This document shows, one piece after another, positions 3,808 through 42,429 of a DNA stretch of 64,000 nucleotides (position 1 is the first letter of the stretch; each line of letters begins with the position of its first letter). The notes under the pieces were generated by a model. That model saw nothing but the letters and a program-made list of their open reading frames with translations, was not told the origin of the DNA and made no database searches. The DNA lies in the IMG/VR virus record IMGVR_UViG_3300041411_000129, positions 186,001-250,000 of that record. One strand, 5' to 3'. The translations under genes and the position numbers were made by a program.

Positions 3808-4902
3808 ATGGCTCGTAAAACTGTTCCGACCACATCTCAGGATAACACCAGTTTGAACCTCACCCTTGACCCAAACGATAAGCAGCCGGTCAAGACTGTC
3901 AAGGCCATCGCCAAAGCAGCGACTAAACCAGCAGCGAAGAAGCCTGGACCTAAACCCGGCGCTAAAGCCGCGGCTGCTAAAGCGGCTGTCAAGCCGGTTG
4001 TCGAGAAAGCAACCCGTAACATCGGTGAAGCGGAGGTTGGTCTGAAAACTAGCCTCGATGATCTGCCGAAAGGTTTGACCGACATCCTGCCGGATGCGAT
4101 GTTGGAAATCCTCGATACCACCAAGGGCGATGCCAAGGTCGTCAACTTCGGTGTAGGCACTCTGCCGAATGATCTCGGCTTCGTCCGCGTTTACGCTGAA
4201 GATAAACTGGTGACGATTACCGATCCAGAACATCTACCGCGTGGTTGGGTCACTCTGGAATCGAACAAGACCCTCGGGTCGAAAGTGTTCTACATCCACA
4301 CGACGAAACTGCCAGGTCACCCGCAAGAAGGCGAATACACCACTGCCCTGCGCAATGCGTACGACGTGGCGATCAGCGAAGCTCTGCGCGATGCTGGCTA
4401 CAGTGATTTCATCCCAGCCGCTGTTGCAACTATCGGCGTGGTTGAAGAGTTCAATCCAATGCTGGTAAATATGGAATCTATCCATAGTCGTCTGCGCCGC
4501 CAGCGTCGTCCTGATCAGCAGTACCTCACCCGCCCTATCGGCGAACACTACAACCGCAACACCATGTCGGTATTGACCCGCAATGGTGAAACCGACTACA
4601 TGTTCGTTCTCGATAACCTGATGGAAGTCAACACTTCCCGCGCCGCAGTCAATCAGGCAATCGAACGGGGTCATCAACTGGTGATCGTAACTATCGGCGA
4701 GCGTAGCTTCACTGCCGCTGTGACTTTGGAAAGCTATCCAATCTCACTCAACACGTTGAACCAAACACTGCTGCTCGAATACCTCAACGATGCGGTACGT
4801 GCATTGTTGGTAACGGCATGGTTTGACAAGATGATCACCGATGTGGTTGTCACCGAGTTCAATACCAAGTTCGCCTACGTCACAACCGCACCAGCCGCTT
4901 AA
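3808..4902 (+). CDS. Hypothetical protein with Lys/Ala/Pro-rich N-terminal tail
   Basis: KAATKPAAKKPGPKPGAKAAAAKAAVKP; AAGGA SD. Confidence 0.85.
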   Translation: MARKTVPTTSQDNTSLNLTLDPNDKQPVKTVKAIAKAATKPAAKKPGPKPGAKAAAAKAAVKPVVEKATRNIGEAEVGLKTSLDDLPKGLTDILPDAMLEILDTTKGDAKVVNFGVGTLPNDLGFVRVYAEDKLVTITDPEHLPRGWVTLESNKTLGSKVFYIHTTKLPGHPQEGEYTTALRNAYDVAISEALRDAGYSDFIPAAVATIGVVEEFNPMLVNMESIHSRLRRQRRPDQQYLTRPIGEHYNRNTMSVLTRNGETDYMFVLDNLMEVNTSRAAVNQAIERGHQLVIVTIGERSFTAAVTLESYPISLNTLNQTLLLEYLNDAVRALLVTAWFDKMITDVVVTEFNTKFAYVTTAPAA

Positions 4903-11690: not shown

Positions 11691-11725
11691 CATCCGTAAA
11701 AAGTTACGGAAGTAGTAAATAAGAT

Positions 11726-11799
11726 GTTCGAACAGCGCCGCGCGTAGCCGCCTCTTCGTAGTGCAGCCGCCCATTGGGCATTTCGCGGCCTGTTCGAAC
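11726..11799 (+). ncRNA. Structured hairpin leader 5' of tRNA-Asn
   Basis: GTTCGAACAG/CTGTTCGAAC (10 bp) plus GCCGCG/CGCGGC. Confidence 0.45.
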
Positions 11800-11804
11800 T
11801 CTGT

Positions 11805-11881
11805 TCCGCGATAGCTCAGTTTGGTAGAGCAAACGGCTGTTAACCGTTGGGTCCCTGGTTCGAGTCCAGGTCGTGGAGCCA
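11805..11881 (+). tRNA. tRNA-Asn(GUU)
   Basis: Canonical cloverleaf, loop CTGTTAA, G73, encoded CCA. Confidence 0.95.
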
Positions 11882-11896
11882 ATTTCTTGTTGTAAT

Positions 11897-11974
11897 GGTG
11901 GGCTTAGCTCAGTTGGTTAGAGCAGCGGCGGGCTTTGCTGTGTGTCCTAGGTTCGAATCCTAGAGTCCACCCCA
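11897..11974 (+). ncRNA. tRNA-His-like RNA (G-1:C73) with non-canonical anticodon loop GGGCTTT
   Basis: Intact acceptor GTGGGCT/AGTCCAC, D and T arms, CCA; no Y32/U33/R37. Confidence 0.8.
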
Positions 11975-11981
11975 TATTCTC

Positions 11982-12070
11982 GAGACTGTAGCACAGTGTT
12001 AGTGCGATCAGCAGGCGTGGTAATTCTCGTCGGCTGGAATGCGTGGGTTCGATTCCCAACGGTCTCACCC
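11982..12070 (+). ncRNA. tRNA-like RNA with expanded anticodon arm
   Basis: GAGACTG/CGGTCTC acceptor, GCAC/GTGC D stem, TTCGATT T loop, 20-nt insert in anticodon arm, ends ACCC. Confidence 0.7.
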
Positions 12071-12106
12071 CATTTCTTTGCAGGGATGCGTAATCGAGTA
12101 TTAAGC

Positions 12107-12781
12107 ATGTCTGTTGATATCAGTAACTATCTGATCGCTACACCACTTCCAGTATCTGAAACCAATCCAGTCGCCTTAGAGCTGCTTGGATCTCTGGCAT
12201 TGATTCAATGTCCTGAGGTTGTTTCTCAGCTGGAAGATGGGTCTGTTCAATTCACCGCACCTACTAAAGGTGCGTCCAGTAAGAGTACTCACCGTACTCG
12301 CACTGAATGGAAAGAACCTGAGTACTGGGCGTTGTCTAGTGCAGCTAAGCACTGGAGTCGCCAGACGATGACTGTTACTAAAGTCAACTCTGCTCAGAAG
12401 GTGGTGGTTGCACAGATTCACGTCAAGGATGCTACAACGCCTCCTTTGAAAGTGTTCTGGAACAAAGGTAAGTTGACGATGGGTTTCCGCGGTAGTTTCG
12501 CCGATCCTACAATCGTTAACTATACCCTCCATACCGACGTACCCTTGGGCGTTCCGTTCAAGATCAGTATCGGTGTGACAGCCAGCGGTTCGGTGTCTGT
12601 CAACGCATCATGTCAAGGGGTTCCTTCCCTAAAGAACGCGTTGAAGTTGAGCAGCACTTGGTTTGACCGCGTACTTCAGTTCCATGGCGGCGTCTACAAC
12701 CAAGTCGACTACACCGATCTTACCTCTGACGAGGATGGTTCGATCTGCATTATCAGTGAGTTGTCTACAACTCACGAATGA
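12107..12781 (+). CDS. Polysaccharide lyase family 7 (alginate lyase-like)
   Basis: RTRTEWKE, QIH and QFHGGVYNQ match the three conserved PL7 strands; upstream part of the ORF-track call overlaps a tRNA-like RNA, so start set at ATG 12107. Confidence 0.85.
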   Translation: MSVDISNYLIATPLPVSETNPVALELLGSLALIQCPEVVSQLEDGSVQFTAPTKGASSKSTHRTRTEWKEPEYWALSSAAKHWSRQTMTVTKVNSAQKVVVAQIHVKDATTPPLKVFWNKGKLTMGFRGSFADPTIVNYTLHTDVPLGVPFKISIGVTASGSVSVNASCQGVPSLKNALKLSSTWFDRVLQFHGGVYNQVDYTDLTSDEDGSICIISELSTTHE

Positions 12782-12787
12782 TTCAAT

Positions 12788-12939
12788 GACTTCTATAGCT
12801 CAGTTGGTAGAGCGTCGTCACTCTCTTTAGGTCGCGGGTTCGAGTCCCGTATCCCCAGCAACGGGGATTAGCTCAGTCGGTAGAGCAGAAGAAAATTACG
12901 AGACGAAGGTCGTAGGTTCAATCCCTGCTAGAAGTCCCA
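12788..12939 (+). ncRNA. Nested double tRNA: outer cloverleaf containing a circularly permuted complete tRNA
   Basis: Acceptor ACTTCTA pairs with TAGAAGT at the end of the second unit; ATCCCC/GGGGAT hairpin; swapped anticodon stems TCGTC/GACGA and GAAGA/TCTTT. Confidence 0.85.
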
Positions 12940-12944
12940 ATTAA

Positions 12945-13020
12945 TGATGCAAGCCTGCGCCCGACACTAAGAGCCCGACGATAGTCATATAGCTCACTAC
13001 GTTGGCCGCAGGCGGCATCA
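12945..13020 (+). ncRNA. Rod-like spacer RNA A
   Basis: TGATGC/GCATCA, GCCTGCG/CGCAGGC, CCGAC/GTTGG, GAGC/GCTC, GAC-GATA-GTC. Confidence 0.6.
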
Positions 13021-13028
13021 CCCTACAC

Positions 13029-13105
13029 GCGTTCATAGTTCAGCTGGTTAGAATACTCGCCTGTCACGCGAGAGGTCGGGGGTTCGAGTCCCCCTGGACG
13101 CGCCA
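13029..13105 (+). tRNA. tRNA-Asp(GUC)
   Basis: Canonical cloverleaf, loop CTGTCAC, G73, CCA. Confidence 0.95.
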
Positions 13106-13121
13106 TATTCAAATGCTTCAT

Positions 13122-13248
13122 GATTCGCATAGCTCAGTGGTAGAGCGCCCCCACAACGGTTCGACTCCGTACGCATCCATCCTTCGGTTTGGGTGTGACC
13201 TGGATAACATGGGGGAGGTCGATGGTTCAAGTCCATCTGTGAATCCCA
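13122..13248 (+). ncRNA. tRNA-like RNA (G-1:C73, CCA) with permuted T-arm/acceptor module in the anticodon loop
   Basis: ATTCGCA/TGTGAAT; CCCCC/GGGGG; inner ACGG-TTCGACT-CCGT plus CGCATCC/GGGTGTG. Confidence 0.8.
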
Positions 13249-13254
13249 ATTCAA

Positions 13255-13322
13255 TGATCCTTGCAGCGGCTGCGCCTGAGTAAATGCTGTCTTAACTTGA
13301 CGTTACGGCGTCAAGAGGATCA
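13255..13322 (+). ncRNA. Spacer RNA B
   Basis: TGATCC/GGATCA closing helix; TTGACG/CGTCAA hairpin. Confidence 0.5.
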
Positions 13323-13332
13323 CCCGTTACAC

Positions 13333-13418
13333 GGAGAGGTTCCCGAGCGGTCAAAGGGATCAGACTGTAAATCTGACGCCTAACAGCTTCGAAGGTTCGA
13401 ATCCTTCTCTCTCCACCA
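13333..13418 (+). tRNA. tRNA-Tyr(GUA)
   Basis: Type II cloverleaf, loop CTGTAAA, A73, CCA. Confidence 0.95.
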
Positions 13419-13439
13419 TTTACCGCTTTACCGGTTTAT

Positions 13440-13572
13440 CCCTTGGTCAGCCGAAAGGGGCTGGGCGGCTATCTGTTCGATACGGTACGTGAGCGCTTTA
13501 GGCAGCTGGCCATAGGCCGCTCACGTTCGTCGTTCAGAAGCGTCGAGAGTTCAACTCTCTCACTCGGGGCCA
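13440..13572 (+). ncRNA. Third nested tRNA-like RNA
   Basis: Outer T arm GAGAG-TTCAACT-CTCTC, ACTCGGG-G-CCA end, TGGGCGG/TCGTTCA stem; inner TTCGATA loop plus CGTGAGC/GCTCACG helix. Confidence 0.65.
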
Positions 13573-13576
13573 TACA

Positions 13577-13714
13577 TGACTCCCTGTGGGACATAGGGGC
13601 TATAGCTTCGTTCGTGTTAGTTGTGTGTAGCGGTCTGCTCTGCGGAGCGCGGCCCAACATGGGAACGAGGGTTTCTGATTATCGCCGGGTGTTCGGTAAT
13701 CAGAGATGGAGTCA
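13577..13714 (+). ncRNA. Multibranched spacer RNA C
   Basis: TGACTCC/GGAGTCA closing helix; CTTCGTTC/GAACGAGG; TCTGATTATCG/CGGTAATCAGA. Confidence 0.6.
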
Positions 13715-13722
13715 ACATACAT

Positions 13723-13834
13723 GGCAAGATGATCTCTGCGAAGATGATCGGAGTACACTCTAGAAGAGTGACTTAACTAGTGCAGTTAAGGACCTAACCG
13801 TTACTGAGGTTCGATTCCTCGTCTTGTCTCACCA
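13723..13834 (+). ncRNA. Atypical type-II (Leu-like) tRNA-like RNA
   Basis: GGCAAGA/TCTTGTC acceptor, TAG in central hairpin, 7-bp variable arm, canonical T arm, TC-ACCA end. Confidence 0.55.
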
Positions 13835-13836
13835 AA

Positions 13837-13867
13837 CATAAAGCCCGGCATTCCGCCGGGCTTTATG
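13837..13867 (+). terminator. Terminator ending the RNA cluster
   Basis: CATAAAGCCCGGC/GCCGGGCTTTATG, 13-bp stem. Confidence 0.8.
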
Positions 13868-41439: not shown

Positions 41440-42429
41440 GTGGCTAATAAACGTCCTCTCGTTTTATTTTCTGGTGGTTTGGATTCAACCTTCAACATGC
41501 TTCTCCACACGCTTGAAGGTGAGTCGGTTGATTACGTTTATATCGACGGGGGTCAAGGTAAAGGTAAGGTCAAGGCAGAGGAAGCGACTATCGATCGTAT
41601 TCTGACCGCACTACATGAACATGCTCGACGTAAGGAGAAAGACGTACGACATCGGTTCAGCACGCACCCTCTGTCGGAGGTTAACTTCTGCAATACTCCT
41701 AGCGCTGGCTGGCGTCAACCTATCCCATGGTTGGTATCGGCGTTAGAAGTAGTAGATCCAGAGAAACACTCGGCTGTTGAAGTCTCCTACGTTCAGGGTG
41801 ATGAAATCATCAGCCGACTCCCTGAACTACAAACGGCGTGGGCTGCGATGTGGGCAGTCACTAAAGTCGGTGAGTTGGTTCCACTGAAGTTTCCGCTCAA
41901 GGATGTCAGTAAGCAGGGTATCCTCTGTCAGATGCCTGAAGATTTGTACAAGCTGACGTGGGTTTGTGAAACACCGATCCTGCAAACGTTCGCTTGGCCA
42001 AAGAGTTGTATCGAATACGGCCGTAGTCATAATGCTCGCTGCCGCGCATGTGAAACTCGTCTCGTTGAGCTGTATCGTTTCGAACTCCGTAACGGTAAGA
42101 CTCTCGAACAATACCACACTGAATGCGCTGAGAAGATTGCTCGTGAAGAGCAGGAAGAGAAAGACCGTGTTCGTCGCCGTGAAGAACGTATCGCTGAAGA
42201 TATGGCCGATGGGTATAAGTCAGCGCTACCTGCTGGTGATGAACTCTCATCTACCTTCGATCGACTACCTAATCGCGGTGACTGGAAAGAACCAGATCTC
42301 ATTAAAGAACCGGATGTCTTTGCTGGTACAGACACGTCTACTATTGACGACATGATGCGCTTTGCCCATAACCCGATGATTCTCGGCAACGTAGAAGCCG
42401 TTCAAGAAGTAGAAATGCAGGAAGCTTAA
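41440..42429 (+). CDS. QueC-like PP-loop ATPase
   Basis: LVLFSGGLDST; TWVCE...C...CRAC metal cluster. Confidence 0.75.
   Translation: MANKRPLVLFSGGLDSTFNMLLHTLEGESVDYVYIDGGQGKGKVKAEEATIDRILTALHEHARRKEKDVRHRFSTHPLSEVNFCNTPSAGWRQPIPWLVSALEVVDPEKHSAVEVSYVQGDEIISRLPELQTAWAAMWAVTKVGELVPLKFPLKDVSKQGILCQMPEDLYKLTWVCETPILQTFAWPKSCIEYGRSHNARCRACETRLVELYRFELRNGKTLEQYHTECAEKIAREEQEEKDRVRRREERIAEDMADGYKSALPAGDELSSTFDRLPNRGDWKEPDLIKEPDVFAGTDTSTIDDMMRFAHNPMILGNVEAVQEVEMQEA

What the first reader, a model, noticed from the sequence alone, without database searches (positions are those of the whole stretch)
11726..13867. Candidate new system: phage RNA operon of nested 'tRNA-inside-a-tRNA' molecules, anticodon-dead tRNA mimics and conserved spacer RNAs
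Seen: only 3 of 9 tRNA-shaped units are canonical (Asn, Asp, Tyr). The other six keep acceptor stems and T loops, and all but one keep an encoded CCA, yet none has a normal anticodon loop. In three (12788, 13122, 13440) the loop is replaced by the same inner architecture: T-arm, then an acceptor stem closed as a hairpin, i.e. a circularly permuted tRNA module. Pairings are maintained across unrelated sequences, which argues against decay. Known: permuted tRNA genes occur in some algae and archaea; bacterial YrlA Y RNAs contain a T-arm/acceptor-hairpin/D-arm module; phage tRNAs help counter host anticodon nucleases (PrrC/RloC, PARIS). Inference: these RNAs could be multivalent decoys for tRNA-elbow-binding defence or surveillance proteins, or precursors that are cut and re-ligated into two tRNAs.
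Basis: partly seen in the sequence, partly recalled or inferred. Interest (0 to 1): 0.93.

Follow-up and report, generated by a model that had tools for sequence, protein, structure and literature searches.

The report
Phage tRNA-within-tRNA mimic RNA cluster
A jumbo-phage tRNA gene cluster encodes three normal tRNAs plus six conserved tRNA-shaped RNAs that cannot read codons; two carry a second tRNA-like domain where the anticodon should be, a widespread kind of phage RNA for which I found no description and whose job is unknown.

Summary
Window 11723-13867 (+) is one RNA island with 11 T-loops. It holds three canonical tRNAs (Asn, Asp, Tyr), six tRNA-shaped RNAs without a usable anticodon loop, structured spacers, an embedded alginate-lyase ORF and a terminal hairpin.

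Two units (12788-12939 and 13122-13248) really are nested. A complete tRNA body carries, in place of the anticodon loop, a T-arm followed by a closed acceptor-like hairpin, and in the first unit also a D-arm. This is the module known from bacterial YrlA Y RNAs.

The third unit claimed as nested (13440) is not. It is a tRNA-like RNA with one long irregular arm.

Orthologues occur in three close relatives, in two distant relatives (47% protein identity), in a 323-kb contig and in the cultured Xanthomonas phage RTH11. Covariation is strong: 25 of 42 pairs changed on both sides, and 97.6% of cells are paired against about 42% in slid controls.

The units fail the tests for YrlA membership (no conserved Ro60-binding motif, no Ro60 gene nearby, below Rfam threshold). 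They also cannot be re-joined into decoding tRNAs.

Best reading: they are non-decoding tRNA mimics displayed on a natural tRNA scaffold, probably decoys or adaptors for tRNA-binding proteins. That function is inferred, not shown. I rate it a new variant of a known kind.

The parts
11723..11802 (+). Leader hairpin (sp0): a 10-bp basal stem GUUCGAACAG/CUGUUCGAAC enclosing a branched structure, immediately 5' of tRNA-Asn.
   Evidence: MFE fold. Alifold of 4 lineages: nearly invariant, with one internal hairpin swapped, GCCC/GGGC to GGCG/CGCC, in L087.
11805..11881 (+). Canonical tRNA-Asn (GUU).
   Evidence: ARAGORN; Rfam tRNA 64.8 bits.
11898..11974 (+). u2: tRNA-shaped RNA with C73-CCA and anticodon loop NGGCUUW (G33 and U37 instead of U33 and R37) and a short variable loop. 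Called 'Ser-GCU' by ARAGORN, but it lacks the long variable arm of type II tRNA-Ser.
   Evidence: The loop core GGCUU is invariant in 4 lineages, while the acceptor (GG/CC to AA/UU) and the anticodon stem change compensatorily.
11982..12072 (+). u3: tRNA-shaped RNA with 22 nt in place of the anticodon loop. It contains AUUCUCGUC and GAAUGC, the two strand motifs of the Y-RNA stems seen in L090/L094. Tail ACCCCA.
   Evidence: Present only in the window and, diverged, in L003; absent from L002 and L087.
12107..12781 (+). Alginate lyase (PL7) ORF embedded in the RNA island. It starts 38 nt after u3 and its stop codon lies 6 nt before u4.
   Evidence: Pfam Alginate_lyase2, E 2.5e-42. Relatives sit in tRNA islands of many jumbo-phage contigs.
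12788..12939 (+). u4: nested tRNA-in-tRNA.
- Outer body: acceptor 12789-12795 with 12929-12935, C73, CCA 12937-12939, D arm 12798-12813, anticodon stem 12815-12819 with 12902-12906, T arm 12912-12928.
- Insert: closing stem 12824-12828 with 12888-12892, T arm 12834-12850, closed acceptor-like hairpin 12851-12868, D arm 12871-12886.
- A 9-nt 3' junction at 12893-12901.
   Evidence: MFE; RNAalifold; pair counts on 4 sequences and on 7 sequences (25/42 pairs changed on both sides, 97.6% of cells paired). Rfam YrlA 40.9 bits over 12803-12919.
12943..13023 (+). sp1: long spacer hairpin with conserved base AAUGAUGC...GCAUCACCC, between u4 and tRNA-Asp.
13029..13105 (+). Canonical tRNA-Asp (GUC).
   Evidence: ARAGORN; Rfam 68.1 bits.
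13122..13248 (+). u6: second nested type.
- Outer tRNA body: acceptor, C73-CCA, D arm, T arm 13221-13237.
- Its 5-bp anticodon stem (13148-13152 with 13211-13215) directly closes a junction holding the inner T arm 13156-13170 and an 8-bp hairpin 13172-13197.
- A single strand 13198-13210 (CCUGGAUAACAU) stands where an inner D arm would be.
   Evidence: With L185 added: 13/35 pairs changed on both sides, 99.3% of cells paired. CM R1 finds further units in L220, L190 and L278.
13253..13325 (+). sp2: spacer hairpin with the same conserved base (AAUGAUCC...GGAUCACCC) and a variable interior, between u6 and tRNA-Tyr.
13333..13418 (+). Canonical tRNA-Tyr (GUA). In L003 the orthologue is interrupted by about 650 nt carrying an endonuclease-like ORF.
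13440..13572 (+). u8: tRNA-like RNA with an acceptor stem, G73-CCA, T arm 13547-13563, a 5-bp pseudo-D hairpin and one long irregular arm of about 80 nt instead of an anticodon arm. It is not nested.
   Evidence: RNAalifold. Pair counts: 9/41 pairs changed on both sides, 100% of cells paired.
13577..13714 (+).
13723..13834 (+). u9: tRNA-Sec/allo-tRNA-like shape. 8-bp acceptor plus 4-bp T stem (8/4), 7-bp D stem with a 4-nt loop, 7-bp variable arm, and a short anticodon-like hairpin (6 bp with a 3-nt loop, or 4 bp with a 7-nt loop). Tail UCACCA, lost in L002.
   Evidence: RNAalifold. Weak Rfam tRNA-Sec hit at 13723-13828, 19.6 bits.
13837..13867 (+). 13-bp GC-rich hairpin followed by UUUAU; likely the transcript end of the island.
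   Evidence: Fold, -24.4 kcal/mol; conserved in L002, L003 and L087. Not flagged by the strict terminator scan.

Best explanation
The region is a single + strand RNA island of an uncultivated jumbo phage (contig of 253,921 bp, probably infecting Pseudomonas).

Besides three decoding tRNAs, it encodes non-decoding tRNA mimics. In u4 and u6 a complete tRNA body (7-bp acceptor, N73, CCA, D arm, T arm, all tertiary-contact residues) acts as a natural 'tRNA scaffold'. Its anticodon loop is replaced by a second tRNA-like domain of the YrlA type: T arm, acceptor stem closed as a hairpin, and a D arm (u4) or a GG-containing strand (u6). The result is one RNA with two tRNA elbows joined tail to tail through the anticodon stems.

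Shown:
- The folds, their conservation with compensatory changes over large evolutionary distance, and the lack of any anticodon loop.
- The failure to meet the YrlA/Ro60 criteria.

Inferred:
- The outer body makes the RNAs substrates of RNase P, 3' trimming, CCA repair and tRNA-modifying enzymes, so they accumulate as stable RNAs of 127-152 nt.
- They act through their tRNA-like surfaces (elbows, acceptor/CCA end), as decoys that titrate proteins recognising tRNA independently of the anticodon, or as adaptors that bridge such proteins. Candidates are host tRNA-directed defence or surveillance factors, or tRNA-handling enzymes.
- u2, u3, u8 and u9 are further non-decoding members of the same toolbox.
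- The spacer hairpins are processing or insulating elements.
For: Structure
- MFE and RNAalifold give the nested folds.
- In u4, U8, A14, G15:C48, G18G19 and U54-U55-C56-A58 can be read directly in both domains.

Selection
- u4-type, 7 orthologues: 25/42 pairs changed on both sides; 97.6% of cells paired against 40-48% when partners are slid; 0/500 shuffles reach the observed values.
- u6-type: 13/35 pairs, 99.3% paired.
- u8: 9/41 pairs, 100% paired.

Distribution
- Orthologues occur in L002, L003 and L087 and in L185/L220, whose AAA protein is only 47% identical to the window's.
- They also occur in the 323-kb contig L190, with four units ending ACCA.
- Cultured Xanthomonas phage RTH11 has both types between tRNA-Ser and tRNA-Gly, and both end in CCA.
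- True orthologues score at least 99.7 bits with model R2. Tandem tRNA pairs score at most 63 bits.

Link to Y RNAs
- The Rfam YrlA model aligns full-length at 40.9 bits.
- The inner hairpin and closing stem of the L003 u4 are nearly the same as in a YrlA-like unit of L090.
- L090 and L094 carry arrays of 6-7 YrlA-like RNAs.
- Psa21, L076 and L092 carry the free-standing module.

Precedent
- T4 species 1 RNA in the T4 tRNA cluster is a T-arm/acceptor RNA with long arms.
- Irregular tRNA polycistrons that are charged but not used in translation are described in PMC5389517.
- M. smegmatis YrlA is cut by RNase P and receives CCA (PMC4201824).
Against: - There are no expression data for any of these phages. 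Transcription, processing and stability are inferred only.
- No protein partner is indicated. The neighbouring ORFs gave no RNA-related Pfam or PHROG hit, and there is no Ro60 in the window.
- Alignment depth is small (4-7 sequences), and A11 was fitted to the model, which favours the structure.
- An invariant AC two nucleotides upstream of the 3' strand of the outer anticodon stem, present in all u4- and u6-type units, is not explained by a pure decoy model.
- The scaffold idea rests on analogy with engineered tRNA scaffolds, recalled from memory.
Confidence: 0.55

Rival explanations
1. They are genuine Y RNAs: they bind a Ro60/Rsr ring (host- or phage-encoded) and tether it to partners, as YrlA does.
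For: - Same module order as YrlA, with a full-length Rfam alignment.
- Relatives L090 and L094 have arrays carrying the GNYGAAUGC and CUCGUC stem motifs.
- u3 contains AUUCUCGUC and GAAUGC.
- Phage Ro60 genes sit next to YrlA-signature RNAs in 6 of 10 viral loci tested.
- Some Pseudomonas species have YrlA (PMC4201824).
Against: - u4 and u6 have a tRNA body where the Ro60-binding stem should be.
- The only GNCGAA matches (12902, 13450) are not conserved in the orthologues.
- No TROVE or vWA_Ro60 ORF was found among the window's ORFs of 440 aa or more.
- The score of 40.9 is below the gathering score of 69, and tandem tRNAs reach 34.8.
Confidence: 0.1
2. They are charged tRNA-like RNAs. The outer acceptor/CCA end is aminoacylated or otherwise modified but never used on the ribosome. 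The RNA might then be a sink for toxins that modify CCA ends, or a valine-type identity mimic read through the invariant A-C (A35 and C36 are the main ValRS identity elements; from memory).
For: - Canonical 7-bp acceptor, N73 and CCA.
- The triplet NAC lies in the register of positions 34-36, before the 3' strand of the outer anticodon stem, in all 14 or so u4- and u6-type units: UAC, CAC or AAC.
- Precedent: irregular tRNAs charged by HisRS but not translated (PMC5389517).
Against: - 'Position 37' is U in 3 of 7 u4-type units, and U33 is missing in several. The discriminator varies (C, A, G), whereas tRNA-Val uses A73.
- Four Val-type paralogues in one array (L190) make little sense for charging.
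- The G-1:C73 pair, which would suggest His identity, is unpaired in 3 of 7 sequences.
Confidence: 0.15
3. They are precursors: the insert is an intron-like element, or the two halves are cut and re-ligated (phage RNA ligase, RtcB) to release one or two decoding tRNAs.
For: - Removing everything up to 7 nt before the 3' strand would leave AUUACGA, CUCACGA or AUCACGA, that is U33, a Val anticodon and R37, in the window, L087 and L003.
- Jumbo phages often encode RNA ligases (PMC7824862).
- An element is inserted in the anticodon loop of tRNA-Tyr in L003.
Against: - The register fails in L002, L185, L220 and RTH11.
- Simple excision of the inner domain leaves 11-15 nt loops, and the inner domain has no loop residues.
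- There is no bulge-helix-bulge motif and no group I core. Rfam finds no intron.
- Both domains are under structural selection as a whole.
- No ligase was detected near the island.
Confidence: 0.07
4. They are cis-acting processing and stability elements: tRNA-like punctuation that lets RNase P and RNase E cut out the neighbouring tRNAs and the embedded lyase mRNA, with no trans function.
For: - The lyase ORF is flanked within 6-38 nt by u3 and u4.
- Spacer hairpins with conserved bases always follow nested units and precede canonical tRNAs.
Against: - Punctuation needs only a simple tRNA-like fold, not a second elbow conserved with 25 covarying pairs.
- In L190, L185 and L220 the units form arrays without intervening ORFs.
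- A possibly stand-alone unit with its own terminator exists in L193, although its fold is ambiguous.
Confidence: 0.1
5. They are decaying or recombined tRNA genes: scars of tandem tRNA rearrangement with no function.
For: - The nested order equals the domain-swapped fold of a tandem tRNA dimer, a plausible evolutionary origin.
- Unit content differs between close relatives: u3 is absent in L002 and L087, and Tyr is absent in L002.
Against: - Orthologues persist at 47% protein-identity distance with compensatory changes in every variable helix.
- 97-100% of cells are paired, and the tertiary residues are intact in both domains.
Confidence: 0.03

Closest known systems
YrlA (Y RNA-like, Rfam RF02553; Chen et al. 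2014, PMC4201824)
   Same: - The module T arm / acceptor stem closed as a hairpin / D arm, closed by an 'anticodon-like' stem, with the tRNA tertiary residues kept.
- Found in phages.
- The M. smegmatis version is a substrate for RNase P and for CCA addition.
   Different: - YrlA joins the module to a Ro60-binding stem (GNCGAAN0-1G) and lies within 4 kb of rsr. Here the module sits inside a full tRNA body, there is no conserved motif, and no Ro60 gene is in the window.
- u6-type units have lost the inner D arm.
T4 species 1 / species 2 stable RNAs (rnaC, rnaD) of the T4 tRNA cluster
   Same: - Non-tRNA stable RNAs encoded inside a phage tRNA operon.
- rnaC has a T arm and an acceptor-like closing stem with long arms, much like u8.
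- Their function is still unknown.
   Different: There is no second tRNA-like domain and no sequence similarity. Model R2 finds nothing but tRNAs in the T4 cluster.
Irregular / allo-tRNAs with 8/4 or 9/3 acceptor branches, and 'polycistrons of irregular tRNAs' (Mukai et al. 2017, PMC5389517)
   Same: - u9 has the 8/4 configuration, a long D stem and a long variable arm.
- Clusters of odd tRNAs that may be charged but are not used in translation.
   Different: - Allo-tRNAs keep a 7-nt anticodon loop.
- Their irregular-tRNA polycistrons are described from likely acidobacterial soil sequences linked to toxin-antitoxin loci.
- None is nested.
Circularly permuted tRNA genes (Cyanidioschyzon and other algae, some archaea)
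   Same: In the inner domain the 3' half precedes the 5' half, and the two are joined across the acceptor ends.
   Different: Permuted genes carry both parts of an anticodon loop and mature into normal tRNAs through a circular intermediate. Here no loop exists, and the domain is embedded in another tRNA.
Engineered 'tRNA scaffold' for recombinant RNA expression (Ponchon and Dardel; from memory)
   Same: An RNA of interest replaces the anticodon loop, so that the tRNA body supplies processing, folding and nuclease resistance.
   Different: That is a laboratory design; this would be a natural counterpart. Whether stability is the selective reason has not been tested.
Viral tRNA-like structures (for example the valine-accepting TYMV TLS), tmRNA tRNA-like domain, mascRNA
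   Same: tRNA mimicry without decoding, and use of RNase P and the CCA enzyme.
   Different: These are cis elements of RNA genomes or parts of larger RNAs with a single tRNA-like domain. ARAGORN and Rfam find no tmRNA here.

Membership tests
canonical tRNA (RF00005) | 7-nt anticodon loop with U33 and purine 37, closed by a 5-bp stem. | tested here: not met
   - u2 loop NGGCUUW (G33, U37) in 4 lineages.
- u3: 22 nt in place of the loop.
- u4, u6 and u8: 62-83 nt of structured insert.
- u9: hairpin of 6 bp with a 3-nt loop, or 4 bp with a 7-nt loop.
- Asn, Asp and Tyr meet the feature.
canonical tRNA (RF00005) | 7-bp acceptor, N73-CCA, and D and T arms with the tertiary residues. | tested here: met
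   The outer bodies of u2, u4 and u6 can be read directly. The G-1:C73 pair is not conserved, so the acceptor is 7 bp.
canonical tRNA (RF00005) | Rfam gathering score of 29 bits over the full model. | tested here: not met
   u4 gives only partial matches of 25.5 and 21.8 bits. u6, u8 and u9 give none. u2 (46.8) and u3 (38.6) pass on score only.
YrlA / bacterial Y RNA (RF02553) | tRNA-like domain in the order T arm, closed acceptor hairpin, D arm. | tested here: met
   The u4 insert at 12824-12892 has it. u6 has the T arm and hairpin only.
YrlA / bacterial Y RNA (RF02553) | GNCGAAN0-1G motif on the 5' strand of the Ro60-binding stem. | tested here: not met
   Matches occur at 12902 and 13450 only. 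Neither is in the right place, and neither is conserved in the orthologues. u3 has GAAUGC and AUUCUCGUC, but in reversed order.
YrlA / bacterial Y RNA (RF02553) | Encoded within about 4 kb of a Ro60 (TROVE) gene on the same strand. | tested here: not met
   - No TROVE or vWA_Ro60 among the five window ORFs of 440 aa or more, nor in the ten neighbours scanned.
- The same scan finds Ro60 in 6 of 10 control viral loci.
- The rest of the 254-kb genome was not available.
YrlA / bacterial Y RNA (RF02553) | Rfam gathering score of 69 bits. | tested here: not met
   40.9 bits. A tandem Asn-Asn pair reaches 34.8.
permuted tRNA gene | 3' half upstream of the 5' half, linked across the acceptor ends. | tested here: met
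   Inner domain of u4.
permuted tRNA gene | The two halves carry an anticodon loop that is restored by circularisation. | tested here: not met
   The inner closing stem has no loop residues. Its strands continue into the outer anticodon stem.
tmRNA | tRNA-like domain plus a tag reading frame. | tested here: not met
   ARAGORN finds no tmRNA. The only Rfam tmRNA-family matches are noise, 12.7-19.7 bits.
allo-tRNA / tRNA-Sec-like (applies to u9 only) | 12-bp acceptor branch in an 8/4 configuration, a long D stem and a long variable arm. | tested here: met
   RNAalifold gives an 8-bp acceptor, a 4-bp T stem, a 7-bp D stem with a 4-nt loop and a 7-bp variable arm.
allo-tRNA / tRNA-Sec-like (applies to u9 only) | Functional 7-nt anticodon loop and serine identity. 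| tested here: inconclusive
   The loop can be drawn as CUAGAAG on 4 bp or as AGA on 6 bp. The two inner pairs never vary. CCA is lost in L002.

The most novel reading that the evidence does not exclude
Jumbo phages of several lineages carry a family of 'tRNA-scaffolded' double-elbow RNAs, alongside relatives that display a hairpin-ACCA minihelix or a Y-RNA stem. These RNAs form a dedicated RNA-based counter-measure. They are matured like tRNAs, immune to anticodon nucleases because they have no anticodon loop, and they soak up or redirect host proteins that recognise the tRNA body or CCA end (tRNA-directed immune effectors, surveillance or repair factors). This would be a natural counterpart of the engineered tRNA scaffold and a new class of anti-defence RNA.
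Probability: 0.25. Interest if true: 0.9.

Novelty: new variant of a known kind. Interest (0 to 1): 0.78.

Why it matters
- Phage tRNA clusters are usually read as codon-supply or as spare parts against anticodon nucleases. Here half of the cluster cannot decode, yet it is conserved with compensatory changes across phages that share only about 47% protein identity.
- The architecture (a tRNA body displaying a second tRNA-like domain) is missed by ARAGORN. No Rfam family reaches its gathering score over the nested units. It is not annotated in the GenBank record of a cultured phage (RTH11), and I found no description of it in the searchable literature.
- It links three separate topics: bacterial Y RNAs, the long-unexplained stable RNAs of the T4 tRNA operon, and 'irregular tRNA' polycistrons.
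- Because RTH11 (both nested types) and Psa21 (free-standing modules) are in culture, the function can be tested directly.
- If these RNAs are decoys or adaptors, they would be a new kind of RNA-level phage-host interaction.
- If they only serve stability, they are a natural precedent for the tRNA scaffold used in RNA production.

Tried and rejected
- **His identity (G-1:C73 plus CCA) for u4 and u6.** Rejected: the pair is unpaired in 3 of 7 orthologues, and the outer halves are no closer to the phage tRNA-His genes than to other tRNAs.
- **tRNA-Val with an insertion at position 31/32.** The register with U33 and R37 holds in only 3 of 7 u4-type units. The invariant AC remains unexplained.
- **Cut and re-ligate into two tRNAs.** No loops would result.
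- **tmRNA reading of 13573-13835.** No support.
- **BLAST of the island against cultured phages.**
  - The full island gave only tRNA-sized hits and the lyase.
  - Megablast of 25 kb found nothing.
  - u6 alone found nothing.
  - Only the L185 u4-type query found RTH11.
- **A generic covariance model of the free module from a MAFFT alignment.** Abandoned because the hairpin and the two D-arm types were misaligned.
- **Other searches that added nothing.**
  - An exact search for the L090 Y-RNA array in IMG/VR gave nothing.
  - The downstream protein as a synteny anchor returned only the same contigs.
- **Signals and neighbouring genes.**
  - A sigma-70 promoter scan found none, as expected if the phage uses its own polymerases.
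  - Pfam and PHROG scans of neighbours in the window, L185, L190, L193 and L220 found no RNA-handling enzyme.
- **phiKZ, the Psa21 region and T4 searched with model R2.** No u4-type unit.
- **L193 'perfect double tRNA'.** The MFE fold prefers pairing of its two identical D-arm sequences, so I do not count it.

Full report
**1. What is in the sequence**

ARAGORN finds five tRNAs on the + strand between 11805 and 13418, and Rfam reports the same five at gathering threshold.

The T-loop motif GTTCRANYC occurs 27 times in the 64-kb window, against 10.5 +/- 3.2 in shuffles. Twelve of these lie on the + strand between 11858 and 13817. One is inside an ORF. The other eleven belong to nine tRNA-shaped units, two of which contain a second, inner T arm.

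The island starts with a conserved branched hairpin (11723-11802). It ends with a 13-bp GC-rich hairpin followed by UUUAU (13837-13867). An alginate-lyase ORF (12107-12781; Pfam E 2.5e-42) lies in the middle. It starts 38 nt after unit u3 and ends 6 nt before unit u4.

No sigma-70-like promoter is present. The window has no near match among 50,697 phage records. It is part of IMG/VR contig 3300041411_000129, which is 253,921 bp long.

**2. The nine units**

- **Canonical.** Asn, Asp and Tyr score 64.8, 68.1 and 54.8 bits.
- **u2 (11898-11974).** A perfect tRNA body with C73-CCA. Its loop reads NGGCUUW, with G at position 33 and U at position 37. The GGCUU core is invariant in four lineages, while the acceptor and anticodon stems change compensatorily. 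ARAGORN's 'Ser' label is nominal, because the unit lacks the long variable arm of type II tRNA-Ser.
- **u3 (11982-12072).** It has 22 nt in place of the loop. It contains AUUCUCGUC and GAAUGC, the two stem motifs of the Y-RNA-like arrays of relatives. It is present only in the window and, diverged, in L003.
- **u4 (12788-12939).** It folds, by MFE and by RNAalifold, into an outer tRNA body whose 5-bp anticodon stem continues into a 5-bp closing stem. That stem opens into a T arm, a 6-bp acceptor-like hairpin and a D arm. In both domains the residues that build the tRNA elbow and core can be read directly: U8, A14, G15:C48, G18G19, U54-U55-C56-A58.
- **u6 (13122-13248).** A variant in which the outer anticodon stem itself closes a junction. 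The junction holds an inner T arm, an 8-bp hairpin, and an 11-13 nt strand with a conserved GG where a D arm would be.
- **u8 (13440-13572).** It is tRNA-like (acceptor, G73-CCA, T arm, pseudo-D hairpin), but its insert is one long irregular arm.
- **13577-13714.** A very conserved three-way junction.
- **u9 (13723-13834).** It has an 8-bp acceptor and a 4-bp T stem, a 7-bp D stem with a 4-nt loop and a long variable arm. This is the 8/4 shape described for allo-tRNAs and tRNA-Sec-like RNAs (PMC5389517).

**3. Is it more than chance or decay?**

Searches with the lyase protein retrieved relatives from IMG/VR and from JGI metagenomes. Three contigs (L002 = L086, L003 = L081, L087) carry the same island.

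On these alone, u4 has 7 pairs changed on both sides, with 98.8% of cells paired against about 46% for slid partners. u8 has 9 such pairs, with 100% of cells paired.

A pattern search for a D arm followed too closely by a T loop, together with two covariance models (R1 from u6, R2 from u4), then found orthologues much further away:
- L185 and L220, whose AAA protein is 47% identical to the window's.
- A 323-kb contig (L190), with four u6-type units ending in ACCA.
- The cultured Xanthomonas phage RTH11. Here a u6-type and a u4-type unit sit between tRNA-Ser and tRNA-Gly in a 13-tRNA island that the GenBank record does not annotate.

With seven u4-type sequences, 25 of 42 pairs have changes on both sides. 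97.6% of cells are paired, against 40-48% for slid partners, and no shuffle of 500 reaches the observed values. This alignment was fitted to the model, which favours the structure. With four u6-type sequences, 13 of 35 pairs covary.

True orthologues score at least 99.7 bits with R2. Tandem tRNA pairs score at most 63 bits. The nested fold is therefore not a mis-read tRNA dimer, the artefact that Chen et al. warned about for YrlA.

**4. Relation to Y RNAs**

The Rfam YrlA model aligns over its whole length to the u4 insert at 40.9 bits, with a gathering score of 69. This alone is weak, since a tandem Asn-Asn pair gives 34.8 bits.

Other evidence is stronger. Two more distant relatives (L090, L094; lyase 73-77% identical) carry arrays of six or seven YrlA-like RNAs downstream of their tRNAs. 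These have the 5' motif GNYGAAUGC, the strand ACUACA, a T arm, a closed acceptor hairpin, a D arm and the 3' motif AUUCUCGUC. One of these units has almost the same inner hairpin and closing stem as the L003 u4.

Psa21 (a cultured P. syringae phage), L076 and L092 carry the bare module (GAGAG-AAACA-T arm-hairpin-D arm-CUCUC) just upstream of the lyase. It is not annotated.

The module is thus a mobile building block in this phage group. It is attached to a Ro60-type stem, left free, or inserted in a tRNA.

As a positive control, a YrlA-signature pattern found 39 viral loci. In 6 of the 10 tested, a Ro60 ORF (vWA_Ro60/TROVE) lies within about 4 kb. The window has no such ORF among those of 440 aa or more. 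The only GNCGAA matches in the island are not conserved. u4 and u6 therefore work with a YrlA-type module but are not members of the YrlA family.

**5. Mechanism**

Shown:
- The RNAs have a full tRNA body with CCA.
- They have no anticodon loop.
- They are under structural selection.

Inferred from established tRNA biology:
- RNase P, 3' exonucleases, the CCA enzyme and elbow-specific modification enzymes should treat them as tRNAs.
- They should therefore be released from the polycistron and be stable.

This is the logic of the engineered tRNA scaffold (from memory). M. smegmatis YrlA is cut by RNase P and receives CCA, so the inner hairpin may also be opened where it reaches 7 bp (L002, L003, L190).

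Because they cannot decode, their activity must come from binding. I consider a decoy or adaptor role for proteins that recognise tRNA shape, elbow or CCA end the most likely (about 0.35-0.4 within an overall 0.55 for the whole explanation).

The rivals are:
- true Ro60-binding Y RNAs (0.10);
- charged but untranslated mimics (0.15);
- precursors that are spliced or re-ligated (0.07);
- pure processing punctuation (0.10);
- gene decay (0.03).

The re-ligation idea fails on anatomy. Joining the outer halves gives loops of 11-15 nt, and the inner domain has no loop residues.

One reading treats u4 as a tRNA-Val with an insertion 5' of the loop. It holds in three sequences but not in the other four. 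What remains unexplained is an invariant AC two nucleotides before the 3' strand of the outer anticodon stem, present in every u4- and u6-type unit.

**6. Known or new?**

Searches of the paper library found nothing on nested or scaffolded tRNA-like RNAs in phages. The topics searched were YrlA and phage, permuted tRNA and phage, tRNA-like decoys, tRNA mimics, jumbo-phage tRNAs and RTH11.

The closest described things are:
- YrlA (PMC4201824);
- the T4 species 1 RNA, which I folded and which resembles u8;
- the irregular tRNA polycistrons of Mukai et al..

No Rfam family reaches its gathering score over the nested units in the window or in L190. One simple-hairpin unit in L185 is called a tRNA with an insertion.

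I file this as a new variant of a known kind: tRNA-mimic stable RNAs of phage tRNA operons, built with the YrlA module.

**7. Verdict**

- The function is open but testable in cultured phages.
- Interest: 0.78.

Noticed in passing
L090 2978-3995 and L094 3777-4980 (metagenome contigs Ga0182007_10009180 and Ga0065714_10067732): Tandem arrays of 6-7 YrlA-like Y RNAs lie downstream of the tRNA island. They have the GNYGAAUGC 5' motif, ACUACA, T arm, closed acceptor hairpin, D arm and AUUCUCGUC 3' motif. One 66-nt unit lacks the tRNA-like domain. Rfam YrlA scores are 34-51 bits. The contigs are too short to see whether a Ro60 gene is nearby.
   Followed up: partly
L017 3840-3979 (= Pseudomonas phage Psa21, L166 about 4214-4353); L076 3838-3913; L092 2909-2980: One or two free-standing permuted tRNA-like modules (closing stem, T arm, closed acceptor hairpin, D arm) lie between the last tRNA and the lyase gene. 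They are not annotated in the Psa21 record. The closing stem changes compensatorily, GAGAG/CUCUC to GAGGG/CCCUC.
   Followed up: partly
L278 (Xanthomonas phage RTH11, OQ790161.1, 73354-78488): The record annotates no tRNA in this region, yet ARAGORN finds 13 tRNAs. Models R1 and R2 find two nested units (L278 2346-2484 and 2495-2645), both ending in CCA.
   Followed up: yes
L007 5537-5652, L015 6310-6416, L185 8132-8245, L220 522-632: This is another scaffold type. A tRNA body has its anticodon loop replaced by a long plain hairpin, immediately followed by ACCA. It looks like an internal acceptor minihelix with discriminator and CCA.
   Followed up: no
L173 1565-1626, L206 6684-6745, L179 1985-2046, L236 4509-4570, and about 20 further loci: Genes for 'anticodon-arm-less' tRNA-like RNAs occur in many unrelated viral contigs. 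They have an acceptor stem, a D arm, an 11-13 nt linker and a T arm, about 62 nt in all.
   Followed up: partly
L003 3157-3817: The tRNA-Tyr orthologue is interrupted in its anticodon loop by about 650 nt. The insert carries a 201-aa ORF with a NUMOD3 motif and weak endonuclease I similarity. The non-coding remainder is too short for a group I intron core, so the gene may be split by a free-standing homing endonuclease.
   Followed up: partly
window 12893-12901, 13198-13210, and the orthologous positions in L185, L220, L190, L278: An invariant AC dinucleotide lies exactly 2 nt upstream of the 3' strand of the outer anticodon stem in all u4- and u6-type units (NAC in the register of positions 34-36). 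It is unexplained.
   Followed up: partly
window 11805-13418 and 41440-42429: The three decoding tRNAs (Asn GUU, Asp GUC, Tyr GUA) all belong to the queuosine (GUN) family; relatives add His. An ORF 28 kb downstream has a weak QueC-like match (E 5e-4). A possible link to Q/7-deazaguanine metabolism, or to nucleases that target GUN tRNAs, was not examined.
   Followed up: no
window 12107-12781 and L001-L022, L166: The alginate lyase (PL7) gene is embedded in tRNA islands in many jumbo-phage contigs, flanked within tens of nucleotides by tRNA-like RNAs. Its mRNA ends may be defined by tRNA processing.
   Followed up: no
L279-L317: A simple YrlA-signature pattern finds 39 viral contigs, many of them 100-435 kb long. 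In 6 of 10 loci tested, a Ro60 (vWA_Ro60/TROVE) ORF lies within about 4 kb. Ro60-Y RNA modules therefore seem common in large phages beyond mycobacteriophages.
   Followed up: partly
L008 5079-5133: A 55-nt match to bacterial LSU rRNA (model positions 330-384, 40 bits, E 1e-8) lies inside a phage tRNA island.
   Followed up: no
L193 11350-11467: A possible stand-alone 'double tRNA' (D arm, T arm, hairpin, D arm, T arm within one acceptor stem) is followed by its own terminator, in a contig with no tRNA genes nearby. The MFE fold prefers pairing between the two identical D-arm sequences, so the structure is ambiguous.
   Followed up: partly
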